NCBI RefSeq assembly: GCF_001194135.2
Contig: NC_069008.1
Span: 15,032,211 to 15,091,301, forward strand
Direction of reading: 5' to 3'
From: Octopus bimaculoides
Lineage: Eukaryota
Length of the DNA stretch: 59,091 nt
The notes under the pieces are model-generated. The model saw only the letters and a program-made list of their open reading frames with translations, was not told the origin of the DNA and searched no databases. Within the stretch, counting starts at the first letter, position 1. Each line of letters starts with the position of its first letter. Both the position numbers and the translations under genes were made by a program. Positions 1,855 to 57,636 of the stretch are shown piece after piece.

Positions 1855-3078
1855 ATTAAACTTCGAAAATAGTTTTTAATTTTGTAGACGTTCGGTTTTG
1901 GCGCGTCGATTCTTTGTTTCTCTTCAATCTTTCATGAATGAAGATGTTTATAATTTGTGCGAGATTTGGTCACTGTCTCCGTACTACTTAAATACAGAGG
2001 TCCCGACGCATCNNNNNNNNNNACAGACTCGCAGTCGACGAAAGGGAAACCGAGGTAAGGCGATTACATCTATTCGCACGCATACACCACAGCGGGTAAG
2101 AACAAATATGCAAGGCTTTTTTTCTTCAAGTTTAAAATGAGACATTGCTGGCATAATTTCCTTATATCTGTAATCCACAACCCATAAATACATAAAAACA
2201 GATCGGACAAGAACAAGCTCGTACACACAATCCATTAGTTTTCTTCCCCCATTTCACCAACTGTCGCGAAGGTATCTGTTACATACGATTTTTGGCATAA
2301 CTACAGGGTTTTAGCACCCAGACTTTGGGAGGTCATAACTTTCAGAAAAATGAATATTTTTTAATGAAATTTTCTATGCATATAGTATTTACTATGTAGA
2401 ATCTGAATGGGGGTGGGGACCATTTTCGGAAACTCCAACAGAGTCCACTTAAATTCTTCTTAACTTCCAGGAAAATTAATATTTTTTCAAGAAATTTTCT
2501 ACAAATATACCTTGATGTATGTACATTTCGAGCATGTAGGAATTTTGAAGGAAACAACTGCAGGTTATTTTTGAGAAGCGTTCCCCACTCGGTGGTGTTT
2601 CGGAGCAAGTCGTCCATATTTGTTTAATTTTTCTCTATTATGTGCGTATGTGCATCCGTAGATTTCTAGACAATAAAGAGAAACCGTCATAAGAAAACTT
2701 TCGTTCAAAATCACATGCACACGATTTTTTTTTTCTCAATAGAAGTAAATTCCAAAGTAAATGTTTCTAGTAGAGAAGTAGAAGAGAACAGGAGCAAAAA
2801 TAGGAATATACACGCACGGTTAAATATAGAAACTATCACAGTGTCGCTTCCCGAAGAATTTTTAAATGTTAGCTTTCCGAAACTTTTTTTTCAATCTTGC
2901 AAAAACACGAAGATTAAGAATAAACAGAAAAAGTACACAAATATATTTTACACACCTGTCGTATACGTCGGTTTTGTTTTTTTCACTTTAAAGGTGGATT
3001 AATCCCAACAAAATAACATAACAATCTTAGAATAATCGTGGACTATCATTCAATTAGGAAAAGCTGGAGACAACATTC

Positions 3079-16289: not shown

Positions 16290-16650
16290 TTCAAAGGGAA
16301 AAGATCCCAGTTGTGTTACTAGTACCGTATTTTTCTAAGCCACATGAAGGGCAAATACGTTCCTTATGCAAGAGCCCATGGCGTCTGCACCAATCAATTG
16401 CTTTTTCATTATCCATTAAATTAATAATCAAATCCGAACAATTTATGCTACTCACTGATGGAAAATTCATATTGAAATTGTAAATGTTAACATTAAATAT
16501 AAACAAAATGAAAGTAAATCATATTGAAGCTAAAAACGAAACTAAATCATATTTAAGCGGTCACGCATAAGCGAAACAAAACAAAACCATATTTAAGGTA
16601 AAAACGAAAGTAAATCAAATTTAAGCTGCCATGCTTAAAATAAAAGCGCC
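16290..16650 (-). mobile_element. 5' end of a Merlin element (GGCGC terminus, subterminal repeats, transposase N-terminus)
   Basis: Minus-strand start GGCGCTTT at 16650; repeated AAATCA(T/A)ATT(T/G)AAG motifs; ORF DNEKAIDWCRRHGLLHKERICPSC typical of IS1595-like N-termini. Confidence 0.7.
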
Positions 16651-16745
16651 ACCAAATCTCGCACAAATCATAGATATCTCTCTTCTATAGCTAGAAATAG
16701 CAGCTAAATCTTGCACAAATCATAAACATGTCTCACCCATAAAAG
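16651..16745 (-). repeat. Same minisatellite, ~2 copies (ZNF2)
   Basis: Reverse-complement units such as ACCAAATCTCGCACAAATCAT. Confidence 0.85.
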
Positions 16746-16829: not shown

Positions 16830-16992
16830 ACTCACGGAAAAATTTCATAAAGGATAACGTTCTTATAAGTGCATTTGTAATAGCTGAGAAATGTATTACA
16901 AATGTATTAAAAGTTAATGAGAGGTAATTCGTTCCACCAACAATTAAACAAATGTCAAGATGGAAAAGGAAATGTATCTAGTGCGCATGCGT
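16830..16992 (-). promoter_or_regulatory. ZNF2 promoter motif, exon 1 and donor
   Basis: TGCGCATGCGT at 16982-16992; minus-strand donor CC|GTGAGTATT starting at 16835. Confidence 0.7.
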
Positions 16993-17296
16993 TTGTGTTA
17001 CAAGAACCACGGCAGCTCACTCTTGTTACTGTTTTTCTTGGGCTGATAACTTGTAGGAAGGCATACGAAAAACGTCAGACGTATAAAATATTTTTAAAAG
17101 TTTTAATATCTATTTTATTTAATTTTCCACTTCAGCATCGTTTTTCAGTCCATTTTGGATACTTTCAAAAATCCATAGTGATACCCATTACCATTTAATC
17201 AGATGTCATAAATACACAGAAAGATTTCAATTGGAATAGAATGCTACATAAAGGGAGATAACAAGTCTTATTCGCTGAAAGTATTACATATGAAAA

Positions 17297-17447
17297 TGCG
17301 CATGCGCAATACACGTACCTTCGTTTCTTGGCATCAGATTAGAAATGTTCGTCGCATGAATTTCTCTTCATCTCCTTTTAATTCATATCTCAACCAACAC
17401 ACACACAGTTTATAGTAACGCTGTCCATATCAATAATTCACGTAAGT
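17297..17447 (+). promoter_or_regulatory. ZNF3 promoter motif, exon 1 and donor
   Basis: Perfect TGCGCATGCGCA at 17297-17308; donor C|GTAAGTATT at 17442. Confidence 0.75.
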
Positions 17448-17530
17448 ATTAAACAACGAAAATCTTCTATCTTAAACATTGTAGACGTTCGGTTTTTGAC
17501 ATGTTGATTCTTTGTGTCTCTTCTGTCTTT

Positions 17531-18126
17531 TATGGAAGAGAGATATCCCTGATTTGGCTGCTATTTCTAGCTATGGAAAAGAGATGTCCATGATTTGTAC
17601 GAGATTTGGCTGCTGTCTCTAGCTGCAAAAGAGAGATGTCTATGATTTATGCAAGATTTGGCTGCTATTGCAAGCTATAGAAGAGCGATGCCCATGATTT
17701 GTGCGAGATTTGGTTGCTATTTTTGGATATGGATGAGAGATGTTTATTATTTATACGAGCTTTGGCCGCTATTTCTAGCTCTGAATGAGAGATGTCCATC
17801 ATTTATGCGAGATATGGCTGCTATTGCTGATTATAGAAGAGAGATGTGTATTATTTGCACGAGATTTGGCTACTATTTCTAGCTATGGAAGAGATGTCTT
17901 TGATTTGTGTGAGATTTGGCTGCTATTTCTAGCTATGGAAGAGAGATATATATTATTCGCACGAGATTTGGCTGCTATTTCTAGCTATGGAAGAGAGATA
18001 TATATTATTCGCACGAGATTTGGCTGCTATTTCTAGCTATGGATGAGTGATGTATATTATTCGCACGAGATTTGGCTGCTATTTCTAGCTATGGAAGAGA
18101 GATGTCTATGATTTGTGCGAGATTTG
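17531..18126 (+). repeat. 52-bp intron-1 minisatellite, ~11 copies (ZNF3)
   Basis: Unit GAGATTTGGCTGCTATTTCTAGCTATGGAAGAGAGATGTCCATGATTTGTGC read directly in tandem. Confidence 0.95.
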
Positions 18127-19932
18127 ACTTATTTCCATTGTTGCACAAACTACCAAGGCAGTTGGTGAGTATGTCACGAGTGGAAGAGAGAAGAAAGAGC
18201 CAGGCAGTCTGGTTTATTATCACAACTTGTAAGATGATGTTTAAGTTAATTATATATGTATCTTCGTGCTATTCATTTTATTTCCTGCCAGCGTTATTAG
18301 ATTAGGATTTGAAATGGGAATAAAAGCACAAGAATTCAAACGAAGATAACGAAAACATAAAGCAATTAAGTATTTGATATGAGTGCAACATACACTTATT
18401 TAAAATTAAAGAAAAGAAAGAACGCTAATAGGAATTCAGTTATACCAGGGGATGGTGGTTACAATTCTGAGGGTGGGAGATAATATTACCTAGATTCTGT
18501 CAGATGATTATGTGATTCTGCTAAAAAGACGAGGAAACAAGTTGAAATTTTGAACAAATAAAGTTTGGATATATACATTTTTGAAGAACAAGTTTCATTC
18601 CCTTGTTTAATTCCCCACATGGTGAACTTGCAAGGCAAAAATTGTCCCAAAAAATGATTTTTTTCACCAAGAACCATTTTCAGAGACCTCTGAATATATT
18701 ATGCCTTGTACATAATCAGTATTTTTGTCATAGACACAGTTCTCAAATTGAAGAAACTTATTAAAGTTTTGCTTATATTAGATAGAAGATCCTTGAATGT
18801 TGACTTTTTTTTAATTTCCACCCATGAAAAGGCCAATAATTCAAAAATGAAGGAAGATGGAACAATTCTGGTAGCAGATTCTTATTTCAGTTTACCTGGA
18901 GTAGCCAATTTCAGTGAAATACTATGATTAGTTTAGATATTCAGCACCAAAATATGTATAAATTGACATTTTTGCAGAACATATGTTTGAAACCCTTAGG
19001 AATTCAACCGTAAAATTATGCATGTGTTCCTTATGCATTTAGAGGTATTACCTTATGCATGTAGAGGTATTACACCTGAGTTGGTCAGGTGGAAAATTTT
19101 TTTAACTTTGTTTGAATTCATATGGAATGAGCCCGTTGTGATCATAGCTCTCTATGTGGCCACACTATCTATTTGAAATATTAGCTATAAATATTAAAGA
19201 TGTAGTTCTAGATATACAGAGCTACAGAAAAAACAGGATGATCATGGATGGAATGTCTTTAATCATATGTATACTGAACCATAGCTACTCTGAACAACTT
19301 CAGATTATATTTCTTGAGAGAAAGGAATGTTATTAACCACTCTTCTCTAGTTTAATCGAAATAATATTACACAGTGTGAAGGTTTAGCTGTTGTTTACAA
19401 ATATCGAAGCTAAACACAAGATTCTGTGATGTAAATTATAAATTAAAAAGCTCAGTCATTCAGGTGAATGTTTATTTCTAAAGTTTATCTTTATAGAAAT
19501 GCAAATTTTCCTCTGTTGAATCTGTATTTTTAAAGTAACCTCTATATCTTACATTGCTGTTCCTTTATTATTTCAGAATATCAGATGACATTGGCAGAAC
19601 AGAAGATATGTTCTCAACATTTATCATCTTTTAAAAACTGAAGGAAATTTTATACAGAGCAGATATATAAAACTGGTAGATACCCTAAGAAATATTTGCT
19701 CAAAAAAATGCTGAGATTATTAGCAAAATTTCTGATCATCACTGATAGGAATGTCTACAAGATGAGTTTATGTGCTGAGTAATCTTGGATAAATTTACAT
19801 AGGTGTTGCTATAGGTGACATTGGGTAGAAATACGGGAGTGGAAGTATTTGTAGAAATAAAAGATAACAAAAGCAAGAAGAATATATATACATTGTGATT
19901 TGAGAAGAAAAATAATAGAGACGCCTAAAGAA

Positions 19933-21162
19933 ATGATTTCCCATGAAGGCATGATGAAAGATATGAGAAAGATGTCATATGACTGTGATGTCTGTAGGAA
20001 GTCTTTCTCTCAAAAATGTAACCTAACTACGCACAAATATATTCATACAGGAGAGAAACCATATCAATGTGATATCTGTGGTAAATCATTTTCTCAGTGT
20101 AGTACTTTGACTTCACACAAGCGTACTCATACAGGAGAGAAGCCATATCACTGTGATATCTGTGGTAAATCATTCACTCAAAGTGGTAAATTGATTGCAC
20201 ACAAACGTTTTCATTCAGGAGAGAAGCCATATCATTGTGATATTTGTGGTAAATCATTCTCGCAAGGTAATACCTTGACTTCTCACAAACGTACTCATAC
20301 AGGAGAGAAGCCATATGACTGTGATATCTGTGGTAAATCATTCTCGCAGAGTAATACCTTGACTTCACACAAACGTACTCATACAGGAGAAAAGCCATAT
20401 CATTGTGATATCTGTGGTAAATCATTCATTCAAAGTGGTAGATTAATTGCACACAAACGTACTCATACAGGAGAGAAGCCATATCATTGTGATATCTGTG
20501 GTAAATCATTCATTCAAAATGGTAAATTAACTGCACACATACGTATTCATACAGGAGAAAAGCCATATCATTGTGATATCTGTGGCAAATCATTTTCTAG
20601 CAGTAGTGAGGTATCTGCACACAAACGTCTTCATTCAGGAGAGAAACCATATCACTGTGATATTTGTAGTAAACCATTCCCTCGAAAAAGTGCTTTATCT
20701 GCACATGTACGTATTCATACAGGAGAAAAGCCATATCATTGTGATATCTGTGGTAAATCATTCTCTCAAAATAGTGACTTAACAAAACACAAACGTCTTC
20801 ATTCAGGAGAGAAGCCATATCACTGTGATGTCTGTGGTAAATCATTCTCTGATAGTAGTCATTTAACTGCACATGTACGTATTCATACAGGAGAGAGACC
20901 ATATCACTGTGATATCTGTGGTAAATCATTCACACAAAATAATGACTTAACTAAACACAGACGTCTTCATTCAGGAGAAAGACCATATCAGTGTGATATT
21001 TGTGGTAAATCATTCTCTCAAAGTTATAGTGTAACTTCACACAAACGTACTCATACAGGAGAGAAGCCATATTATTGTAATGTCTGTGGTAAATCATTTA
21101 CTAAATGTAGTAATTTAACTGCGCACAAATGTATTCAGAGAGAAGAGAAAGGAAAAGTGTAG
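19933..21162 (+). CDS. C2H2 zinc-finger protein ZNF3 (13 fingers plus a degenerate last finger)
   Basis: Tandem C2H2 ORF; the ancestral ATG reads ATA at 19915, so the first in-frame ATG is 19933; C-terminus QREEKGKV; AATAAA at 21239. Confidence 0.88.
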
Positions 21163-21887
21163 TTTGTATGGTTTCTTCTGTTGACTTCTTTTTCTTAATA
21201 TTTCCTGTTTTTCATATAAAGGAAATTACAATTCTGAAAATAAAGTATTTCCAAAAATTCCAGTTTTTTATTTTGTCTTTCATACCTTTTCACACAAGCC
21301 TCACTTCCTTGCTCCTTTCATTTCTCATGATGGAGGGAGCTCTATACTGAAACTTCCCCTCCGTCAACCCTACACATTGTTCTTTGTTGAGTACCACTTC
21401 CCCAATTTACTATATATTTATTTTTTTTATTAGATTTTAAATGCTTCTCAAAATATGTTAATGATAGCAACTGTACCCCTTCTTGTTGACTCCACTATAT
21501 ATAGATATATATACACACACACATGAAGAAACATTCTAGAGCTAAGCGCTGTATGGACATGAAACCCAGGGTAGCCCCATAGACCGGCCATAACTATCTA
21601 TGCGTGTGTGTGTGTGTATGATTTATGCGAGATATGGTTGCTATTTCTAGCGATATTATTGTTTTTACGTCCTTGTAATGTATAGGCTCGACAAAAAGAA
21701 ACCGAAAGAACAAGTACCAGGCTTAAAAAGAAAAAATGCTGGGGCCGATTCATTCGACTAAAAATTCTTCCAGGCAGTGCCCCAGCATGGCCACAGTTTA
21801 ATGGCAAAAAGGTAAAAGATACATACAGACAGTATAAAGATAAAGGGGAATAACACGAATTAGTTGACGGAAATATTTCATAAGAAA

Positions 21888-22030: not shown

Positions 22031-22121
22031 ATTGAACATCGAAAATGTTTCACCTTCTAACACTGGAGACGTTCAGTTTTTGACGACTCGATTCTTTGTG
22101 TTTCTCTCGTTTGTTTTGGAT

Positions 22122-22166
22122 GGGAGATGTCCATGATTTATGCGAGATATGGTTGCTATTTCTAGC
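22122..22166 (+). repeat. Same minisatellite, ~1 copy (ZNF4)
   Basis: GGAGATGTCCATGATTTATGCGAGATATGGTTGCTATTTCTAGC. Confidence 0.85.
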
Positions 22167-26898: not shown

Positions 26899-27124
26899 TT
26901 GAGTTGTCCGGAAAGTTCGTGCCGATTTCTAGTAGCTTACCTTTCGACTTATTTGCCATGAAACCATCTCAATTCTGGGAAGAGGGTATTTTCAAGTTAA
27001 AGGAAAGATGGAAACGCATTGTGCAACAAAATGGTTCATATTTGGTTGGTTAAAAATGTAATGGTCAATTTATTGACCTTTTTCTTTCCTTTAAAAATCG
27101 GCACGAACTTTCCGGACAACCCAA
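26899..27124 (+). mobile_element. Internally deleted mariner (MITE) with TA TSD
   Basis: TIRs TTGAGTTGTCCGGAAAGTTCGTGCCGATTT / AAATCGGCACGAACTTTCCGGACAACCCAA flanked by TA; FWEEGIFKLKERWKRIVQQNGSY remnant. Confidence 0.9.
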
Positions 27125-27231
27125 TACATTTAGATACTTTCAAAAATCCATAGTGATACCCATTAACATTTAATCAGATGTCATAAAGGGAGATAACAAG
27201 TGTCATCCACTGAAAGTATTACATATGAAAA

Positions 27232-27382
27232 TGCGCATGCGCAATACACGTACCTTCGTTTCTTGGCATCAGATTAGAAATGTTCGTCGCATGAATTTCT
27301 CTTCATCTCCTTTTAATTCATATCTCAACCAACACACACACAGTTTATAGTAACGCTGTCCGTATCAATAATTCACGTAAGT
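27232..27382 (+). promoter_or_regulatory. ZNF5 promoter motif, exon 1 and donor
   Basis: TGCGCATGCGCA at 27232-27243; donor at 27377; nearly identical to the ZNF3 module. Confidence 0.75.
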
Positions 27383-27471: not shown

Positions 27472-27797
27472 TTATGGAAGAGAGATATCCATGATTTGGC
27501 TGCTATTTCTAGCTATGGAAGAGAGATGTCCATGATTTGGCTGCTATTTCTAGCTATGGAAGAGAGATGTACATGATTTGGCTGCTATGGAAGAGAGATA
27601 TCCATGATTTGGCTGCTATTTGTAGCTATGGAAGAGAAATGTCGGTAATTTTTCAGGTTAACACCCGCACGATCTTCACTAGGGTGTTAGGGTTAGGGTC
27701 ACGGACGGAATTCCCAAACCCTAACCCCCTAGTGAAGATCGTGCTGGTGTTAATCTGAAAAATAACCGATTTGGCTGCTATTCCTAGTTATAGAAGC
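27472..27797 (+). repeat. Minisatellite (41-bp variant), ~5 copies, interrupted by a hairpin element (ZNF5)
   Basis: Units GATTTGGCTGCTATTTCTAGCTATGGAAGAGAGATGTCCAT; insertion at 27644-27767. Confidence 0.9.
27644..27767. mobile_element. 124-bp foldback MITE (51-bp arms, 47/51 identity)
   Basis: Manual arm alignment; GGTAA terminus; TTAGGG-like inner arm. Confidence 0.8.
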
Positions 27798-30006
27798 TAA
27801 AATAGAGATGTGGAAAATAATAATTATTACATGGTTAGAAAGTTAGCTGAAGGGAGATATATAAAGAGTTAGAAATCCAATGTTTAGTAGAGGGTTGGTG
27901 TTCTGTTGGTAAGGTGAAAGAAAGGCAGGAAGAGAGAGAAGAGGGCAGTTGTTTTGAGAGTGAGAGGCAAAGAATGGGAGAGTATTAGACTGCCTGCCAC
28001 ATTAGTGGAAGTGGGAGGTAAAGAGAAAGAGAGAGAAATGATAATGTGAAGAAAAATACTGACATGCTTAAAAAATTAGTTGAAAGAAAAAGAGAGCAGG
28101 AAATTTTAAACATATATTATTGGGACTGACAAGAAAATAACATCTTGGTCAAGTTTTTATGTCTTCTATTTATCTATCTATTCACATTGACAACTACATC
28201 GATGACTGGATGGAAGAAAGGAGGCTTATATTAGATATCATGTTAACAGTACTAGAGACTGAAAAATAGATTTTTGAATGAAAGTGAAATAACTAAGCAA
28301 AGTATATCTGTGGATAGTTATTACTTTTTCCTGCTATTTGTTATTCGAGCTTTGTATTGTCAGAGTATCCGGATACATCAGTGGCAAGCAAACTAGATAG
28401 GAATATGAAACAAAAATCTGAAATGCGATGAAAATATTCTTGGTTGGCAAATAACTTAGACTAAACTTTGTTACTGAAAGCTATAATAATGATGATGATG
28501 ATGATGATGGTGGTGGTAGTGGTGAGTAGATACTTAGTTTTCTTTTCATTGAACTTAATAATTTGTAGATGGAATCTTAAAGGAGCCTATCATATAAATA
28601 GATATATGTGTGTGTTTGTGTTCATTCACATCATATTATAGTTGTAGATAAGTGCACTATTATATGGACAGTGTCATTCTTTTTCAATTGTCTGTGTAAA
28701 CATGTTATGAGAGAATATTACTTTGCTCGGAATCAGGTAAGGATTTGACCCATGCAGGCATTAAAAGTTACACAGTAAAATGGTGATGATGATGATTATG
28801 ACATTCTGGAAAAGGACTTGCTAAGAAAAACTCCTCCATAAATGAAATATAATTATCGTCAATATTATGATTTGAAAAAGTATTTTTCCATGCTTGCTCG
28901 GCTCAGACAGAATTCATAGACGTAGAATTGTTATGGGCAGATGTCCTTCTTGTCACCAGTCCTCAAGCAAGGTAATATTTCACCGTATCCTGACATGTTT
29001 CCATGGAAGACTGGGATCAAATGACATGTTGATTCTTGTTTATATCTATCAGGGGATGTCAGACCAAGAACACACACACATGCCACTGATGCTATTGTAA
29101 GAGACACTTGTTGAAGGTACTGCACTGTGGTTGAGAATCAAACTTCTTAACCACTGCCAGGCCAATTACATTTTTTTTTATTAATTCATTCGGCTGTCTT
29201 TTCTTCATTCATCAATGTTTATTTTTGTTTGAATAGTAATAAAAACTGTAGGCCCTGTTTAAACAACTTCATTGTGATTACAGCTCTCTGTGGCCTTAAA
29301 TATTGAAAATGTAGTCCTAGATATACAATGCTATTGAAAAAAACAGGATGTTCACGGATTGGATGTCTTTAATCATATGTATACTGGGCCACAACTGATC
29401 TGCAGCTAAACAACGTCAAATTATATTTCTTAAAAGAGAAGAATGTTATTATTTGCTATTCTGCAGTTTAATCTAAATAATATTACACAATGTGAAGGTG
29501 TAGCTCTGGTTTACAAATATGTAAGCTACACAGAAGATTCAGTGATGTAAATTTTAATACATTAAAAAGTTCAGTTGTTCAGGTAAATGTTTATTTATCA
29601 AGTTTATTTATATAAATGTTGTAAATTTTCCACTATTGAATCTGTATTTTGAAAGCAGCCTCTTTATCTTACACTGTTGTTTCTTTATTTCAGATGGCAT
29701 TGGTATAACAGAAGATATATTCTCAATATTTATCATCTTTTAAAACTGAAAGAAAATTATGTACAAAGTAGATATATAACAGTATTTCAATAAATCTGTT
29801 GTCGATTTCTGTGAAGTATTTGTTCTAATTTGATATCATAAGCAAAATTTCTGCACATCTGACTGGAGTGCTGAGCAGACTTCGATACATTTACATAAGT
29901 GTTACTAGAGAAGGGAAACAGTGGACAGAAGTGGAAGTATTTCTAAGATTAAACAAGAAGAAAAACAAGGAATGTATATTTATATTGTGATTTGAGAAAA
30001 ATAACA

Positions 30007-31482
30007 ATGGAAAAGATTGAGAAAATTATAGAAATACATACAGGAGAAAAACTACATCACTGTGATGTCTGTGCTAAATCATTCTCTGATAATGATGACT
30101 TAACTAAACACAAACGTATTCATTCAGAAGAAAAACCTTATCATTGTGATATCTGTGGTAAATCAGCCTCTCGAAATAGTGACTTAACTAAACACAAACG
30201 TCTTCATTCAGGAGAGAAGCCATATCACTGTGATGTCTGTGGTAAATCATTCACTCAAAGTAGTACCTTGACTTCACACATACGTATTCATACAGGAGAG
30301 AAGCCATATCACTGTGATATCTGTGGTAAATCATTCTCTCAAAATGGTGCTCTAATTAAACACAAACGTATTCATACAGGAGAGAAACCATACCATTGTG
30401 ATATCTGTGGTAAATCATTCATTGAAAGTGGTAAATTAACTGCACACAAGCGTACTCATACAGGAGAGAAGCCATGTCATTGTGATGTCTGTGGTAAATC
30501 ATTTTCTGACAGTAGCCATTTAACTGCACACGTACGTATTCATACAGGAGAGAAACCCTATAATTGTGATATCTGTGGTAAGTCATTCTCTCGAAATAAT
30601 GACTTAACTATACACAGACGTATTCATTCAGGAGAAAGACCATATCAGTGTGATATTTGTGGTAAATCATTCTCTCAAAGTTATAGTGTAACTTCACACA
30701 AACGTACTCATACAGGAGAGAAGCCATATCATTGTGATATCTGCGGTAAATCATTCTTTGAAGGTAGTATATTAACTGCACACAAGCGTATTCATACTGG
30801 TGAGAAGCCATATCACTGTGATATCTGTGGTAAATCTTTCATCCGCAGTAATGACACAACTAGACATAAACGTATTCATACAGGTGTGAAGCCATATCAT
30901 TGTGATATCTGTGGTAAATCTTTCATTGAAAGTGGTATATTAACTGCACACAAGCGTATTCATACAGGAGAAAAGCCATATCACTGTGATATCTGTGGTA
31001 AATCTTTCATCCGCAGTAATGACATAACTAGACACAAGCGTATTCATACAGGAGTGAAACCATATCATTGTGCTATCTGTGGTAAATCATTCATTGCAAG
31101 TGGTAAATTAACTGCACACAAGCGTATTCATACAGTGGAGAAGCCATATCATTGTGATATCTGTGGTAAATCTTTCATCTGCAGTCATGACATAACTAGA
31201 CACAAGCGTATTCATACAGGAGTGAAACCATATCATTGTGATATCTGTGGTAAATCTTTCATCTGCAGTAATGACATAACTAGACACAAGCGTATTCATA
31301 CAGGAGTGAAACCATATCATTGTGCTATCTGTGGTAAATCATTCATTGCAAGTGGTAAATTAACTGCACACAAGCGTATTCATACAGTGGAGAAACCATA
31401 TCACTGCGATATCTGTGGTAAATCTTTCATCCGCAGTAATGACTTAACAAGACACAGACGTATTCACACAGGAGAGAAGTGA
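30007..31482 (+). CDS. C2H2 zinc-finger protein ZNF5 (17 fingers, truncated by an 11-bp deletion)
   Basis: Tandem C2H2 ORF; ATG at 30007; paralog of ZNF8 and ZNF3. Confidence 0.92.
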
Positions 31483-33367: not shown

Positions 33368-33472
33368 ATTAAACAATGAAAATATTCAGTCTTTCTAATT
33401 CTATAGGCTTTCGATATTTGACGTCTCGATTCTTTGTGCTTCTTCTATCTTATATGAATGAATGATGCCGTC

Positions 33473-34350
33473 TATGATTTGTGCGGGATTGGGTTGCTAT
33501 TCCTAACTATGGAAGAGAGGTGTCTATGATTTGTGCGAGATTTGGCTGCCACTTCTAGCTATGGAAGAGAGATGTCGGTCAATGTTGACATTATTACTCG
33601 GAAACGAAATCGAAAAAAAAAAACAGTGCATCGGGTGTAAAAAAAATGGAAACGAATATGAAAATAAAAGTGCGCGGAAAGCAATGGGGGATGCGGAGAG
33701 GATTTCGGAAAATTCACAAGATTCGTGTTTTTTCCCTAATAACTTTTATGAAGGTGGGTTTTTTTTTTTTACATGAAATTTTATATTAATACCTTTCAAA
33801 CGGCATACGTTACGATTATAATTTGTGGGTAAAATCTTTTCCGAGGGGTGGGGAGAGGACTTCGGAACCCACAAATTTTGTTATGATCGTAATGTATGCC
33901 GTTTGAAAGGTATNNNNNNNNNNNNNNNNNNNNNNNNNNNNNNNNNNNNNNNNNNNNNNNNNNNNNNNNNNNNNNNNNNNNNNNNNNNNNNNNNNNNNNN
34001 NNNNNNNNNNNNNNNNNNNNNNNNNNNNNNNNNNNNNNNNNNNNNNNNNNNNNNNNNNNNNNNNNNNNNNNNNNNNNNNNNNNNNNNNNNNNNNNNNNCC
34101 CCCCCCCCAAAAAAACATTTTCCTAAAAGTTGTGAGAGAAAAACTCGGGTCTTGTGAATTTTCCGAAGTCCTTCCCCCACCTCTGTTGCTTTCCGTGCAT
34201 TTTTGTTTTCATATTCGTTTCCTGCTTCCCCCTTTTTTTTCCCACCCGTTGCACTATATTTTTTTCGATTTCGTTTCCGGGTAATAATGTCAACATTAAC
34301 TGAGATGTCTGATTTGTGCGACAGTTGGCTCCTATTTCTAGCAATGGAGG
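33473..34350 (+). repeat. Minisatellite, ~3 copies, split by a MITE (ZNF6)
   Basis: Units at 33473-33576 and 34302-34350 flank the inserted palindrome. Confidence 0.85.
33577..34301. mobile_element. Palindromic MITE with 8-bp TSD GAGATGTC (Merlin-like)
   Basis: ~200-bp arms; TSD at 33569-33576 and 34302-34309; inner hairpin 33790-33913; contains an N gap. Confidence 0.85.
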
Positions 34351-34412
34351 CTACCTTTTACATTCCCCATCGTTGCCGCGTTAGTTTCTTGTGCGTTTTA
34401 GTTTGAGAAATA

Positions 34413-44874: not shown

Positions 44875-45006
44875 TATAGCTCGCTCCGGCCAGTCATGGT
44901 ATTAGCTGTCAGTAGCCAAAGAATCGACAGGCATTCAGGCAGACAGACAGATACTTCACTAGCAGTGAGCACTTTCACTTCTGACAGCTAATAGCATGAT
45001 AGTGCC
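44436..45006. mobile_element. 571-bp MITE with ~210-bp TIRs, GGCAC termini and 8-bp TSD (Merlin-like)
   Basis: Arms 44436-44645 and 44786-45006 are near-identical; flanks TATTTCTC and TTTTTTCTC (one copy degenerate). Confidence 0.9.
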
Positions 45007-45049
45007 TTTTTCTCAAACTAAAACACAACAAACACGGCAACGATGGAGG

Positions 45050-45310
45050 ATGTAGCTTCCATAGCTAGGAATAGCAGCCAAATCTTGCACAAATAATAGA
45101 TATCTCTCATTCACAGCTAGAAATAGCAGCCAAATCTCGCACAAATCATGGACATCTCTTCCATAGCTAGAAATAGCAGCCAAATCTGGCACAAAACATA
45201 GACATATCTCTTCCATAACAAGAAACAGCAACCAAATCTCGCTTAATTCATAGACAACTCTCATCCATAGCAAGAAATAGCAGCTAAATCTTGCACAATT
45301 TATAGACATT
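45050..45310 (-). repeat. Minisatellite, ~5 copies (ZNF7)
   Basis: Tandem reverse-complement units CATAGCTAGAAATAGCAGCCAAATC. Confidence 0.92.
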
Positions 45311-45382
45311 TCTGATACATAAAAGGTAGGAGAAACCCAACCAATCAAAAAGTCTACTGATGAAATATTATCATTGTTTAAT

Positions 45383-47471: not shown

Positions 47472-48872
47472 TTAATCTTTTCCTTTCTCTTCTCTATGAA
47501 GACGTACATGTCTAGTTAAATTACTACTTTCAGTGAATGATTTACCACAGACATCACAATAATATGGCTTCTCTCCTGTATGAGTACGTTTATGTGAAGT
47601 TACGCTATAACTTTGAGAGAATGATTTACCACATATATCACAGTGATATGGTCTCTCGCCTGAATGAAAACGTTTGTGTTTAGTTAAGTCACTATTTTGT
47701 GAGAATGATTTACCACATATATCACAGTGATATGGTCTCTCTCCTGAATGAAAACGTTTGTGTTTAGTTAAGTCACCATTATCAGGGAATGATTTACCAC
47801 AGATATCACAATGATAAGGTTTCTCTCCTGTATGAGTACGTTTATGTGCAGTTAAGGAACTATTTTGGGAGAAGGATTTACCACAAATATCACAATGATA
47901 TGACTTCTCTCCTGTATGAATACGTATGTGTGCAGTTAAGTTACTACTTTCAGAGAATGATTTACCACAGATACCACAATGATATGGCTTCTCCCCTGTA
48001 TGAATACGCTTGTGTGAATTTAATTTACTACTTTCAATGAATGATTTGCCGCAGATATCACAATGATGTGGCTTTTCTCCTGTATGAGTACGCTTGTGTG
48101 ATGTCAAGGAATTACCTTGAGAGAAAGATTTACCACAGATATTGCAGTGATATGGCTTCTCTCCTGTATGAATACGCTTGTGTGCAGTTAATTTACCACT
48201 TTCAATGAACGATTTACCACAGATAGCACAATGATATGGTTTCACTCCTGTATGAATACGTCTGTGTCTAGTTATGTCATTATTGCGGATGAAAGATTTA
48301 CCACAGATATCACAGTGATATGGCTTCTCTCCTGTATGAATACGGTTATGTGCAGTTAATTTACCACTTTCAATGAAAGATTTACCACAGAAATCACAAT
48401 GATATGGTTTCACTCCTGTATGAATACGTCTGTGTCTAGTTATGTCATTATTGCGGATGAAAGATTTACCACAGATATCACAGTGATATGGCTTCTCTCC
48501 TGTATGAATACGCTTGTGTGCAGTTAATTTACCACTTTCAATAAAAGATTTACAGCAGACATCACAATGATGTGGCTTCTCTCCTGTATGAGCACGCTTG
48601 TGTGAAGTTAAAGAATTACTCTGGGAGAAGGATTTACCACAGATATCACAATGATATGGCTTCTCTCCTGTATGAATACGTTTGTGCTTAGTTAAGTCAC
48701 CATTATCAGAGAATGATTTACCACAGATATCACAGTGATATGGCTTTTCACCTGTGTGGATACGTTTGTGAGCAATTAAGTTACTATTGGCAGAGAATGA
48801 TTTACCACAGACATCACAGTGATGTGGTTTTTCTCCTGCATATATTTCTATATTTTTCTCACTCTTTTTCAT
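47472..48872 (-). CDS. C2H2 zinc-finger protein ZNF8 (16 fingers)
   Basis: Tandem C2H2 ORF; ATG at 48872; C-terminus HREEKGKD; AATAAA on the minus strand at 47390-47395. Confidence 0.93.
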
Positions 48873-49593
48873 TATTATTTTTCTCAATCGACAATGTAAA
48901 TATAATTTTCTTGTTTTTCTTCTTGTTATTTAATCTTACAAATACTTTCACTCCTGATTTCTGTCCACTGTTTCCCTGCTCTAATAACATTTATGTAAAT
49001 GTATCCAAGCACACAAACTCATCTTCTTAGCACTCCAGTCAGTGATGTGCAGAAATTTTGCTAATCATATCAGATTAGAAGAAATATTTCACAGAAATCC
49101 ACAACATATTTATAGAAAGTGTTATATATCTGCTTTGTATATCATTTTCTTTCAGTTTCAAAAGATGATAAATATTGACAATGTATCTTCTATGATGCCA
49201 AAGTCATTTGATATCCTGAAATAATAAAGAAACAACAGTGTAAGATAAAGAGGCTGCTTTAAAAATACGGATTCAACAGAAGAAAATTAACAACATTTCT
49301 ATAGAGATAAACTTAAGAAATAAACATTTACCTAATCTTTTTAATGTATTAAAATTTACATCACTGAATCTTCTGTGCTTACATATTTGTAAACTACAGC
49401 TACATCTTCACATTGTGTAATATTATTTAGATTAAACTGCAGAATAAGAAGACAATAACATTCTTCTCTCTTAAGAATGTTGTTTAGTTGCAGAGTAAAG
49501 ACATTCTATCCATGAACATCCTGTTTTTGCAGTAGCATTGTATATCTATGACTACATTTTCAATATTTAGTGTGTGCATCCTTATAGTTAGTA

Positions 49594-50560: not shown

Positions 50561-51484
50561 TACATCCATATATTTATAAATGTATAAATATCTACTTACA
50601 CACACACATATATATACATTCCTACCTACCCACATATATAAAAACATTATGCTTGCATATGTACATATGGTGGGCTTCTTTCAGTTTCAGTCTATCAAAT
50701 CTATTCACAAGGCTTTACTCAGCCCTGGGCTACAGGAGAAGATAGTTGTTTGAAGTGCCTCTGCAGGCCTGTTTATCTATGTGTGGTTGTGTATATATGC
50801 ATTTGTCATGTTTCTGATGTCAAATAACTGATATTGACCTGTATGAGTCGGTTTTGCTGGAGAACTGAAGCAACAGATTAACATTATCTTGCCTTACTCA
50901 TTTTGCCCCAATCAAATTTCTCTTTTACATGTTCAGATAACAGCGATAATTTTCTGAAATAGCGATCAGATTATGTTATACTGCCTTTTAATGCATTTAG
51001 GGAAGGCCGTGTGCTTAGCTCATACAGTCTTTGTAAGGAAGTGAACATTCGTAAAAAATATATTTTGTCTCAAAATCAAAAGTACAATAAAAACACCTCA
51101 TTCTGCTCGCCCAGTGCATAAATACACAAACACACACACGTTATATTTAACTTGTTTCAGTCATTAGAATACGACCATCCTGGGGCACGGACTTGAAGTT
51201 TTTAGTAAAACACGAATGGGCTCCAGAACTTATTTTCTCAGCCTGGCACTTATTCAAGCAGTTTCTTTTTGGCCCAACTGCTGCTTTTTTATGGGGACAT
51301 AAACAAATTAACACCGGTTTTCAAGCGATTTTAGTGAACAGAGAGAAATACAAATACACAGATGTGTAGACTGGCTTCTTTCACTTTCTGTCTACCAAAT
51401 TCACTCACGAGGCTTTGGTTGCTAGAGGCTGACACAAAAGCACACAACAAACTAAGGTGACAACAATGGAGAGTGTACAAGTTA

Positions 51485-51962
51485 GCTTCCATAACTAGAA
51501 ATAGCAGCCAAATCTCGCATAAACCATAAACATATCTCATCGGCAGCTAAATCTCGCACAAACCATGGACATCTCTCTTCCATAGCTAGAAATAGCAGCC
51601 AAATATCGCACAAATCATAAACATATCCGATCTGCAGCCAAATCTAGCACAAATCATGGTTATTTCTCTTCCATAGCTACCAATAGCAGCCAAATATCGC
51701 ACAAATCAAAGACTTCGCTCATCTATAGCTAGAAATGACAGCCAAATCTAGCCCAAATCATGGATATCTCTCTTCCATAGCTAGCAATAGCAGCCAAATC
51801 TCGCGCAAATAATATACATCTCTCTACCATACCTAGAAATAGCCAAATCTTGCATAAATCATAGACATCTGTCGTCTGCATCTAGAGACAGCAGCCAAAT
51901 CATGGACATCTCTCTTCCATAGCTAGAAATAGCAGCCAAATCATGGATATCTCTCTTCCATA
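51485..51962 (-). repeat. Minisatellite, ~10 copies, mixed 52/41-bp units (ZNF8)
   Basis: Tandem reverse-complement units. Confidence 0.93.
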
Positions 51963-52052
51963 AAAGACAGAAGAGACACAAAGAATCAACATTTCAAAAA
52001 CCGAACGTCTACAATGTTTAAGATAAAAGATTGAATTTTTTCGTTGTTTAAT

Positions 52053-52201
52053 ACTTACGTGAATGCTTGATATGGACATAGTTACTATAAACTGTGTGTG
52101 TTGGTTGAGAAACGAATTAAAAGATGATGAAGAGATATTCATGCGACGAACATTTCTAATCTGATGCCAAGAAACGAAGGTATGTATATTGCGCATGCGC
52201 A
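52053..52201 (-). promoter_or_regulatory. ZNF8 promoter motif, exon 1 and donor
   Basis: TGCGCATGCGCA at 52190-52201; minus-strand donor GTAAGT starting at 52058. Confidence 0.75.
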
Positions 52202-53391
52202 TTTTTCATCTGTAATACTATTAGCAGATAAGACTTGTTATCTCCCTTTAAGTAGCATTCTATTGTGATTGTACGTTTTTCTGTGTATTTATGACATCTG
52301 GTTAAATGGTAATGGGTATCACTATGGATTTTTGAAAGTATCTAAATGTAATATCTACTTTACTTCTTATTTGAGAGGATCATCCAAAAAGAAACATTTT
52401 GTTAGCGCAGTTGTGAAATTTGGATGAATATTTTGAGGAATATAACAATGCGAATGGTCAGCAAATTTGTTGAAATTTTACCTTACTAGGAAGTTAGCAC
52501 AAAACGAAAGTACATCACATCTAGGCCAACTCTCTTCCTAATTTCATGGGATATGACTCTGACAAAAGCAGAGTGGAGTTGAGAAGGATCACAATCTACT
52601 TGGAAAACTTTTTTTCATCAGTTATGTTAAGATAATTGTAATCTAGACCCTTGAAAGCTGCTAAGTTTAATTTAAAAACCAATTCTTCAGAAAGTTAAGA
52701 GAATATAATCTGTTGTAGGGCCCTAGACCATAGATATGCCCCATGTTTTTGTGGTGTCTTCGATTTCGTACTGGAGGTCATTGTTTTTTTATATATTTGA
52801 CAATTTTGCTGCATTTCTGTGTTTGAAAGAACCCCTAACATACCTAACTGTTAACACATTTAAGGGGTGAAGTATTTAAAATTTAATAATGAATAAATAT
52901 ACAGTAAATTAGGAAGTGATACTTAACAAAGCCATGTGTAGGGTTGCCAGGAGGAATTTCAGTATAGAGGTCCCTACATCATGGGAAATGAAACGGGAAT
53001 GGAAGTAAAGGAGGAAGCTGGGAGAAATTTTTCAAAAAAAGACAAAAAGAAACTCGAATTTCTGGAAAAGCATTTTTTCAGAGTCGTAATGTCAGTTACA
53101 TGATACACAGGAATATTTTTTAAAAAAAGTTTACAAAAGAATCCATACAAAGTAGCCTTTTCCTTTCTCCCCTGTATGAATACATTTGTGTGCAGTTAAT
53201 TTACTATTTTCAGTGAATAATTTATCAGTGAAATAGCTTCACATTTGTATGAAGTGAAGGCATAATGGTCAGACAATGATTTAGTAGACATCACTTTGAT
53301 ATGGTTTCTCTCTGGTGTGAATACACTTGTGTCTAGTTAAGTTACTATTTATAGAGAACAATGTGAATGATTTACCACAGATAGCACAATG

Positions 53392-57486: not shown

Positions 57487-57566
57487 AACCAAATCGTGAA
57501 CATCTCTCATCCGCAGCTAGAAATAGCAGCCAAATCCCGCACAACTCAAAGATGTCTCTCTTCCAT
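57476..57566 (-). repeat. Minisatellite, ~2 copies (ZNF9)
   Basis: CTAGAAATAGCAGCCAAATCCCGCACAA. Confidence 0.85.
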
Positions 57567-57636
57567 AAAACATAGAAGAGACAAAAAAACCGAACGTCTA
57601 CAGAATTAAAAACATTGAATATTTTCAAGGTTTAAT

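What the first reader, a model, noticed from the sequence alone, without database searches (positions are those of the whole stretch)
17531..18126. Gene-linked 52-bp minisatellite at a fixed intron-1 position with paralog-specific copy number
Every ZNF gene has this repeat starting ~90-100 bp after the donor, in gene orientation, behind a conserved spacer (AGACGTTC(G/A)GTTTT...GATTCTTTGTG). Approximate copy numbers are 1-2, 2, 11, 1, 5, 3, 5, 10 and 2, with 52- and 41-bp variants. It occurs nowhere else in the window except one orphan copy. A repeat that travels with the promoter and expands independently looks like a tunable cis-element (factor or ZNF docking array, or chromatin or splicing modulator). 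I know of no description of it, but could not search.
Basis: partly seen in the sequence, partly recalled or inferred. Interest (0 to 1): 0.7.

Follow-up and report, generated by a model that had tools for sequence, protein, structure and literature searches.

The report
Intron minisatellite in octopus ZNF genes
A 52-base tandem repeat sits at the same place just inside the first intron of every gene of one octopus zinc-finger subfamily; it is at least about 34 million years old and ranges from 1 to 14 copies, but nothing yet shows that the copy number does anything.

Summary
The window is Octopus bimaculoides chromosome CM046628.1. All nine C2H2 zinc-finger (ZNF) genes carry the same 5' cassette:
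- a GCGCATGCGC box;
- a non-coding exon 1 of about 150 nt;
- a GTAAGT donor;
- a CpG-rich spacer;
- the 52-bp unit, 0.7 to 11.3 copies, in gene orientation.

The cassette is not a feature of all ZNF genes. It marks the MEKSEK-leader subfamily. I found it in 5 O. vulgaris and 5 O. sinensis genes (1 to 14 units), so it predates a split of about 34 My. Three other O. vulgaris ZNF clusters lack it.

In 259 kb of octopus DNA the unit occurs nowhere outside cassettes. No whole genome could be searched.

The fixed position follows from common descent plus gene conversion of the cassette.

Copy number differs between cassettes that are otherwise 95-99% identical. Two arrays carry transposon insertions, and four of 19 cassettes hold about one unit or less. 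Units evolve about as fast as the neighbouring ancestral non-coding DNA.

The "tunable cis-element" idea is therefore neither supported nor excluded. I found no published description.

The parts
17551..18135 (+). g3 minisatellite: 11.3 units of 52 bp. A partial first unit starts at about 17517.
17298..17307 (+). g3 promoter box GCGCATGCGC (NRF1-type palindrome), followed by an ACTTCCG-like ETS-type site. The same box heads all nine cassettes: 1672, 16983, 17298, 21889, 27233, 33189, 45525, 52191, 57789.
   Evidence: The transcription-factor assignment rests on the consensus from my own knowledge and was not tested.
17308..17441 (+). g3 putative non-coding exon 1. The 5' end (transcription start) is not mapped.
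   Evidence: inferred
17442..17550 (+). g3 intron-1 donor GTAAGTATTAAAC plus the CpG-rich spacer (AGACGTTCGGTTTT...GATTCTTTGTG) and the partial first unit.
19568..19576 (+). g3 conserved acceptor TTATTTCAG. Putative exon 2 starts at 19577 and the ATG is at 19933.
19933..21162 (+). g3 coding exon: 409-aa poly-C2H2 zinc-finger protein, 13 fingers.
1934..1969 (+). g1 unit, 0.7 copy. A scaffold gap lies at 2013-2022.
16652..16741 (-). g2 array, 1.7 units.
22117..22166 (+). g4 single unit.
21618..21651 (+). Stray copy of g4's own unit, about 240 bp upstream of g4's box.
27473..27641 (+). g5 array, about 4 units of 41 or 31 bp.
27642..27769 (.). Palindromic MITE-like (miniature transposon-like) insertion inside the g5 array, with 57-nt arms. 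The array resumes at 27770-27811.
33470..33576 (+). g6 array, 2.1 units.
33577..34301 (.). Foldback element inserted in the g6 array, flanked by an 8-bp GAGATGTC duplication. It contains an N gap. The last unit and the tail follow at 34302-34377.
45056..45321 (-). g7 array, 5.2 units. The conserved tail follows at about 44990-45055.
51486..51977 (-). g8 array, about 10 units including 41- and 39-bp variants. The tail is at 51459-51485.
57490..57582 (-). g9 array, 1.5-2 units.

Best explanation
**What it is.** The 52-bp repeat is an inherited part of a 5' cassette of about 0.45 kb that defines one lineage-specific subfamily of octopus C2H2 zinc-finger genes, those with the MEKSEK...SYDCD leader. 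The cassette runs in this order:
1. a GCGCATGCGC box;
2. a non-coding exon 1;
3. a strong donor;
4. a CpG-rich spacer;
5. one or more 52-bp units;
6. a tail of about 60 bp.

**Shown.**
- It always lies upstream of a ZNF coding exon, in the same orientation.
- Its position is fixed by descent.
- Cassettes have been exchanged between paralogs.

**Inferred.**
- The unit was amplified head to tail by slippage or unequal exchange, probably early.
- Arrays then gained and lost units. They lost the internal 11 bp between two GATTTG repeats, which gives the 41-bp units. They also took up transposons.
- The ancestral intron 1 was short (about 0.4 kb). The non-alignable middle of today's introns is mostly later insertion.

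**Function.** The cassette's promoter and spacer are the functional core. The array is most likely a tolerated, unstable extension with at most a weak effect that does not depend on copy number.
For: **Same cassette everywhere**
- Nine of nine genes in the window carry it.
- Full cassettes occur in O. vulgaris on OX597842.1 (module E-values 6e-64 and 1e-56; arrays of 14.2 and 7.2 units) and on OX597841.1 (three cassettes with 1.1, 1.0 and 2.0 units).
- O. sinensis CM016862.1 has five arrays of 1.4-3.2 units with the same tail.
- The species split is dated to about 34 Mya (PMC10700109).

**Specific to the subfamily**
- L004, L005 and L007 carry other leaders and have no cassette.

**Not found elsewhere**
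- No unit lies outside cassettes in 259,340 bases. These include about 52 kb of ZNF-free O. sinensis DNA.

**Gene conversion**

| Pair | 5' module | 500 bp before the coding exon | Leader |
|---|---|---|---|
| g3/g5 | 96% | 82% | 75% |
| g3/g8 | 93% | 84% | 77% |

- The homology has sharp ends, 145 bp upstream of the box and at the end of the array.

**Instability and tolerance**
- g3 has 11 units and g5 about 4, with 95-99% identical flanks.
- Two units in g3 are identical.
- Transposon insertions sit in the g5 and g6 arrays.
- CpG observed/expected is 0.46 in arrays, against 1.40 in promoter and exon 1 and 1.71 in the spacer.

**Rate**
- Match to consensus is 0.88 for units, 0.85 for the spacer and 0.76 for exon 1.

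**Short ancestral intron**
- In L006 the tail almost abuts the conserved block before exon 2.
- In 23-75% of the mid-intron sequence there are dispersed copies elsewhere.
Against: - Units are not more alike within arrays (0.796) than between distant arrays or species (0.796), and 31 of 44 have their nearest neighbour in another array. Ongoing neutral slippage predicts the opposite. An old array or purifying selection on each unit is needed.
- Positions 1-35 of the unit are better kept (0.90) than positions 36-52 (0.83), in both species.
- The unit is retained in all 19 cassettes.
- The intronic spacer and units are better conserved than exon 1, which hints at a DNA-level role downstream of the transcription start.
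Confidence: 0.6

Rival explanations
1. The array is a tunable cis-regulatory platform: each unit is a binding site for a sequence-specific factor, possibly a poly-zinc-finger protein of the family itself. The number of units then sets transcription, chromatin state or splicing of each paralog.
For: - The array sits at a fixed promoter-proximal position, kept in three species for at least about 34 My.
- A core of about 35 bp is conserved (0.90), with a more variable remainder.
- Unit similarity is star-like and equal within and between arrays and species.
- Unit lengths of 52 and 41 bp are close to 5 and 4 helical turns (my own arithmetic; it may be coincidence).
Against: - Four of 19 cassettes have about one unit or less.
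- Copy number differs widely between near-identical cassettes.
- Transposon insertions are tolerated inside arrays.
- The array's CpG is decaying at background level.
- Units are no better conserved than the neighbouring spacer.
- No binding, expression or chromatin data exist.
Confidence: 0.2
2. The cassette, or its unit-plus-tail part, is a fragment of a transposable element that carries an internal tandem repeat. It would be dispersed genome-wide and was co-opted or merely carried along by these genes.
For: - The homology block has sharp ends in g3, g5 and g8.
- The layout, a unique 5' part followed by a variable tandem repeat and then a tail, resembles composite elements (my own knowledge).
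- A stray unit lies upstream of g4.
Against: - All 19 copies lie upstream of a ZNF coding exon in the same orientation, and none elsewhere in 259 kb.
- No terminal inverted repeats or target-site duplications were seen at the cassette borders.
- The cassette starts with a promoter box and holds a conserved splice donor.
- Only a tiny fraction of a genome of more than 2 Gb was seen.
Confidence: 0.08
3. The array acts at the RNA level: as an intronic splicing element, as part of an alternative exon or a short first intron that ends at the tail's TTTTAG, or as a source of small RNAs.
For: - The array lies 65-116 nt after a strong donor.
- The tail ends in pyrimidine-rich TTTTAG or TTTCAG, and donor-like GTGAGT follows in g3 and g8.
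- The unit contains a purine-rich GAAGAGAGA stretch.
Against: - There is no stable RNA fold on either strand (z = -0.81 and +0.28).
- There is no Rfam match.
- The frame breaks within two units, since 52 is not a multiple of 3 (read from the sequence).
- The putative sites behind the array are not conserved in all cassettes.
Confidence: 0.07
4. The copy numbers are assembly artefacts, from collapse or expansion of repeats in the short-read-based O. bimaculoides scaffold.
For: The window has N gaps, one of them 44 bp after the g1 unit and one inside the element that splits the g6 array.
Against: - Arrays of similar structure and range (1 to 14 units) are present in two independent assemblies of other species.
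- Units within arrays are diverged (about 80% pairwise), so they can be assembled.
Confidence: 0.03

Closest known systems
Promoter-proximal and intronic VNTRs (variable-number tandem repeats) that modify expression in humans, for example the ZNF558 VNTR, the INS VNTR and SLC6A4 STin2 (from my own knowledge; not retrieved here).
   Same: A minisatellite with a unit of tens of bp, located next to a promoter or in an early intron, with variable copy number. ZNF558 is itself a zinc-finger gene.
   Different: In the human cases the copy number varies between alleles and has measured effects. Here the variation is between paralogs and species, no effect has been measured, and the same repeat is shared by a whole gene subfamily through descent.
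Satellite and tandem repeats linked to ZNF clusters: beta-satellite around human chr19 KRAB-ZNF clusters, and the 70-90 bp tandem repeat reported as enriched in the flanks of octopus C2H2 genes (Albertin et al. 2015, Nature 524:220). Both are recalled from memory; the paper is not held.
   Same: Tandem repeats physically associated with expanded ZNF gene clusters. The second case is in the same organism.
   Different: The period here is 52 bp, not 68 or 70-90 bp. The repeat sits at one fixed intragenic position inside a conserved 5' cassette, not in intergenic flanks. It is restricted to one subfamily.
ZNF274/TRIM28-marked 3' ends of human ZNF genes (my own knowledge).
   Same: Repeated DNA inside ZNF genes that serves as a landing site for a zinc-finger protein. 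This is the model behind the "ZNF docking array" reading.
   Different: That signal lies in the coding finger repeats at the 3' end. Here the repeat is non-coding and at the 5' end, and no binding has been shown.
Composite transposable elements with an internal VNTR, such as SVA (my own knowledge).
   Same: A unique 5' part followed by a variable tandem repeat and then a conserved tail.
   Different: No dispersal away from the gene family was seen. There are no terminal repeats, target-site duplications or poly-A. The 5' part is a promoter plus an exon with a splice donor.

Membership tests
Minisatellite / VNTR | Head-to-tail tandem copies of a 10-100 bp unit | tested here: met
   Period 52 bp (variants of 41, 39 and 31 bp) and up to 11.3 copies in the window. 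Two of the nine genes have one unit or less.
Minisatellite / VNTR | Copy number varies between loci or individuals | tested here: inconclusive
   Copy number varies between paralogs and species, from 0.7 to 14.2.
Minisatellite / VNTR | Within-array homogenisation, with units of one array more alike than units of different arrays | tested here: not met
   Identity is 0.796 within arrays and 0.796 between distant arrays. In 31 of 44 units the nearest neighbour lies in another array.
Cis-regulatory VNTR (expression-tuning repeat) | Located in or next to a promoter or first intron | tested here: met
   The array starts 65-116 nt after the conserved first donor and about 210-290 nt after the GCGCATGCGC box. 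The exon-intron structure is inferred, not shown by transcripts.
Cis-regulatory VNTR (expression-tuning repeat) | Copy number correlates with expression or chromatin state | not testable with these tools
   No RNA or chromatin data were reachable.
Cis-regulatory VNTR (expression-tuning repeat) | The unit is bound by a defined factor | not tested
   There is only an uneven conservation profile: positions 1-35 at 0.90, positions 36-52 at 0.83.
Transposon-borne tandem repeat | Copies dispersed independently of any one gene family | tested here: not met
   All hits in 259,340 bases lie in ZNF 5' cassettes or are pieces split off from them. No whole genome was searched.
Transposon-borne tandem repeat | Terminal repeats or target-site duplications at the ends of the element | tested here: not met
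   None were seen at the sharp homology borders in g3, g5 and g8. The elements inserted in the g5 and g6 arrays do show them.
ZNF-cluster satellite (beta-satellite, or the 70-90 bp octopus repeat) | Period of about 68 bp or 70-90 bp, lying in gene flanks | tested here: not met
   The period is 52 bp and the position is fixed and intragenic. The only 84-bp periodicity in the window is that of the coding finger arrays.
Structured or small-RNA locus | Stable or conserved RNA fold, or a match to a known RNA family | tested here: not met
   z-scores are -0.81 and +0.28. There is no Rfam hit.

The most novel reading that the evidence does not exclude
Each 52-bp unit is a conserved binding site, with a core of about 35 bp, long enough for a multi-finger protein. 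The factor that docks there would possibly be a member of the same ZNF subfamily. The array would then be a promoter-proximal dosage dial, or a nucleation site for a chromatin state, that sets paralog-specific expression in the octopus ZNF expansion. That would be an invertebrate, 5'-end counterpart of ZNF-on-ZNF-gene regulation in mammals.
Probability: 0.15. Interest if true: 0.7.

Novelty: new member of a known kind. Interest (0 to 1): 0.38.

Why it matters
Octopus genomes carry one of the largest C2H2 zinc-finger expansions known outside vertebrates, and how these genes are regulated is unknown.

- **A marker for the subfamily.** The cassette (promoter box, exon 1, spacer, 52-bp unit, tail) gives a handle on the family's history, including clear gene conversion of 5' ends.
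- **A natural allelic series.** It offers 1 to 14 copies of the same element on near-identical promoters. If copy number mattered, this would be a ready-made system to test how promoter-proximal repeats tune expression in a rapidly expanding gene family.
- **If it does not matter.** It is still a clean example of a minisatellite fixed in position by descent, and a caution against reading function into "fixed position plus variable number".

Tried and rejected
**Closed or empty routes**
- Albertin et al. 2015 is not held. Its statement on tandem repeats is cited from memory only.
- Five literature searches found no description of this repeat.
- A metagenome scan for the 25-nt core gave 0 hits. 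That collection holds no eukaryotic genomes anyway.

**Protein searches**
- Searches with full-length or 200-aa ZNF queries were swamped by vertebrate ZNFs. Only the short leader profile and one O. sinensis hit led to useful loci.
- No species deeper than O. vulgaris/O. sinensis could be reached. L009 (Logan run ERR14375725, organism unknown) has a ZNF array but neither cassette nor unit.
- Look-ups of the window's own proteins returned only the genome record, with no transcript contigs.

**Readings rejected**
- Coding potential of the array: the frame rotates and stops occur within two units.
- RNA hairpin or miRNA origin.
- A match to a known RNA family.

**An argument I withdrew**
- I first argued that the cassette must be under selection because the rest of the intron does not align.
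- I withdrew this after seeing that the ancestral intron was probably short and that the mid-introns are largely later insertions.

**Not attempted**
- Prediction of ZNF binding motifs from the recognition code, which I judged too unreliable to count as evidence.

Full report
**Identity of the window**

One window protein is encoded on NCBI assembly GCA_001194135.2, record CM046628.1, at about 15.03-15.09 Mb. From my own knowledge this is the chromosome-scale Octopus bimaculoides assembly.

The window holds nine genes (g1-g9). Each has a large exon encoding 10-20 C2H2 fingers and no other domain. The 84-bp periodicities found by Tandem Repeats Finder are these finger arrays.

**The observation**

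The stretch at 17531-18126 is a true 52-bp tandem array:
- 11.1 copies at 80% matches by Tandem Repeats Finder;
- 11.3 copies at 89% identity to the consensus GATTTGGCTGCTATTTCTAGCTATGGAAGAGAGATGTCTATGATTTGTGCGA in an unbiased wraparound alignment;
- a 36-nt core that occurs 15 times, against none in shuffles.

A profile of the unit finds it in all nine genes, always in gene orientation. Copy numbers are 0.7, 1.7, 11.3, 1.0, about 4, 2.1 (+1), 5.2, about 10 and 1.5-2. The 41-bp variant is the unit minus the 11 bp between two GATTTG repeats.

Three further copies exist:
- Two are the ends of the g5 and g6 arrays, cut off by inserted elements. One is a palindromic miniature element at 27642-27769. 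The other is a foldback element at 33577-34301 with an 8-bp duplication.
- The third is a copy of g4's own unit upstream of g4's promoter.

**Anatomy of the cassette**

Aligning the nine 5' regions shows one cassette:
1. an invariant CGCATGCGC palindrome (an NRF1-type consensus by my own knowledge), followed by an ACTTCCG-like site;
2. a poorly conserved non-coding segment of about 130-180 nt;
3. an invariant donor CG|GTAAGTATTAAAC;
4. a spacer of about 90 nt (AGACGTTCGGTTTT...GATTCTTTGTG);
5. the unit or units;
6. in many genes, a tail of about 60 bp, CTACCTTCTACACTCTCCATCGTTGCC...TTTTAGTTTGAG.

CpG observed/expected is 1.40 in the box and exon 1, and 1.71 in the spacer. It is 0.46 in the arrays, against 0.52 for the window. 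The array therefore lies just outside a small CpG-rich promoter block.

An acceptor, TTATTTCAG, is conserved about 370 nt before each ATG in all nine genes and in two O. vulgaris genes. The array thus lies at the 5' end of a putative intron 1. This structure rests on sequence signals only.

**Beyond the window**

| Locus | Species and record | Result |
|---|---|---|
| L003 | O. vulgaris OX597842.1 | two full cassettes (E = 6e-64 and 1e-56) with arrays of 14.2 and 7.2 units |
| L006 | O. vulgaris OX597841.1 | three cassettes with 1.1, 1.0 and 2.0 units plus the tail |
| L008 | O. sinensis CM016862.1 | five arrays of 1.4-3.2 units with the tail, some separated from their promoter part by insertions |
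| L004, L005, L007 | O. vulgaris, other ZNF clusters | neither cassette nor unit; their proteins have other N-terminal leaders |

- The unit consensus of O. vulgaris differs from that of O. bimaculoides at one position in 52.
- Genes with the cassette share the MEKSEK...SYDCD leader.
- The two lineages split about 34 Mya (PMC10700109), so the cassette with its unit is at least that old. It marks a subfamily, not ZNF genes in general.
- In the 259,340 bases examined no unit lies outside a cassette. These bases include about 52 kb of O. sinensis DNA without ZNF genes.
- This is far too little of a genome of more than 2 Gb to exclude dispersed copies.

**History**

The 5' cassettes and the rest of the genes have different trees.

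| Pair | Cassette | Conserved 500 bp before the coding exon | Leader |
|---|---|---|---|
| g3/g5 | 96% | 82% | 75% |
| g3/g8 | 93% | 84% | 77% |
| g5/g8 | 91% | 90% | 84% |

The high-identity tract starts abruptly 145 bp upstream of the box and ends at the end of the array. This is the signature of gene conversion, or cassette exchange, among paralogs.

Copy number changes faster than point substitution:
- g3 has 11 units and g5 about 4, although exon 1 is 99% and the spacer 95% identical.
- In g3/g8 the arrays align at only 83%, while the flanks are 92-97% identical.

**Is the unit under selection?**

I first took the non-alignability of the rest of intron 1, even between genes with 90% identical flanks, as evidence for constraint on the cassette. 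That argument does not hold:
- In one O. vulgaris gene the tail almost abuts the conserved block before exon 2, so the ancestral intron was probably only about 0.4 kb.
- In 23-75% of each mid-intron there are similar copies elsewhere, as expected for later transposon insertions.

Measured without selecting good units, match to consensus is 0.88 for units, 0.85 for the spacer and 0.76 for exon 1. Mean pairwise identity between units is about 0.80, much as for the other ancestral non-coding blocks.

Against a role for copy number:
- Four of 19 cassettes have about one unit or less.
- Two arrays carry transposons.
- The unit's single CpG is decaying.

In favour of constraint on the unit:
- Positions 1-35 are better kept than positions 36-52 (0.90 against 0.83) in both species.
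- The intronic spacer and units are better kept than exon 1.
- Units are no more alike within an array (0.796) than between distant arrays or species (0.796), and 31 of 44 have their nearest neighbour in another array.

Ongoing neutral slippage alone predicts the opposite of that last pattern. It fits either an old array decaying unit by unit or purifying selection on each unit. I cannot separate these two with the tools available.

**Other readings**
- The array does not fold as RNA (z = -0.81 and +0.28).
- It matches no Rfam family.
- It cannot encode protein: 52 is not a multiple of 3, and stops occur in two of the three frames of each unit.
- A transposon origin is not supported by the sample. 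There are no copies away from ZNF genes and no terminal repeats or target-site duplications at the borders. It remains formally open until a whole genome is scanned.

**Verdict**

The best explanation is descent: a subfamily-specific 5' cassette whose intronic 52-bp segment became an unstable minisatellite, with cassettes homogenised by gene conversion (confidence about 0.6).

I found no description in the searchable literature. The tandem repeat that I recall from the 2015 octopus genome paper has a different period (70-90 bp) and location (gene flanks), and that paper could not be read here. In kind, this is a gene-associated, promoter-proximal minisatellite: a new member of a known kind.

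Noticed in passing
window 16983-17307: g2 and g3 are head to head. Their GCGCATGCGC boxes are only about 306 bp apart, which looks like a bidirectional promoter pair. The other seven genes are not paired this way.
   Followed up: no
window 27642-27769: A palindromic miniature element (57-nt arms, 91% complementary) that contains TTAGGG/CCCTAA telomere-like motifs is inserted inside the g5 array.
   Followed up: partly
window 33577-34301: A foldback element with nested inverted repeats and an 8-bp GAGATGTC duplication is inserted in the g6 array. It contains the assembly gap 33914-34098.
   Followed up: partly
window 14331-43358, minus strand: The public gene call of 747 aa runs from inside g7 to the end of g2, across g3-g6 on the other strand. 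It is most likely a fused gene model.
   Followed up: no
window 19577-19932, and the equivalent stretch in the other genes: A putative exon 2 or 5'UTR block of about 370 nt is conserved in all paralogs and in O. vulgaris. In most copies it holds a 4-codon upstream ORF (ATG ACA TTG GCA TAA) right after the acceptor. A possible small intron (AAAG|GTAACA ... TTTGAG) lies before the ATG.
   Followed up: partly
window 17153-17297, 27090-27232, 52201-52345: g3, g5 and g8 share an extra 145 bp upstream of the promoter box (ATTTAGATACTTTCAAAAATCCATAGTGATACCC...) that the other cassettes lack. It marks the 5' end of the conversion tract.
   Followed up: partly
window 16505-16558: A separate 28-bp tandem repeat (1.9 copies) lies directly behind the g2 array.
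   Followed up: no
window 29992-31482 and 47472-48887: The g5 and g8 proteins start [15 protein letters not shown] / [15 protein letters not shown]. They lack the long leader and the first SYDCD finger of the other seven. g4 has broken fingers (for example [16 protein letters not shown]).
   Followed up: no
L008 28198-28299 and 33515-33662 (O. sinensis): In two neighbouring cassettes the same junction (AACTAACAAGACTTCYTTGATTTG) joins an insertion to the first unit. The insertion therefore predates their duplication. One of the two has no detectable promoter module upstream.
   Followed up: no
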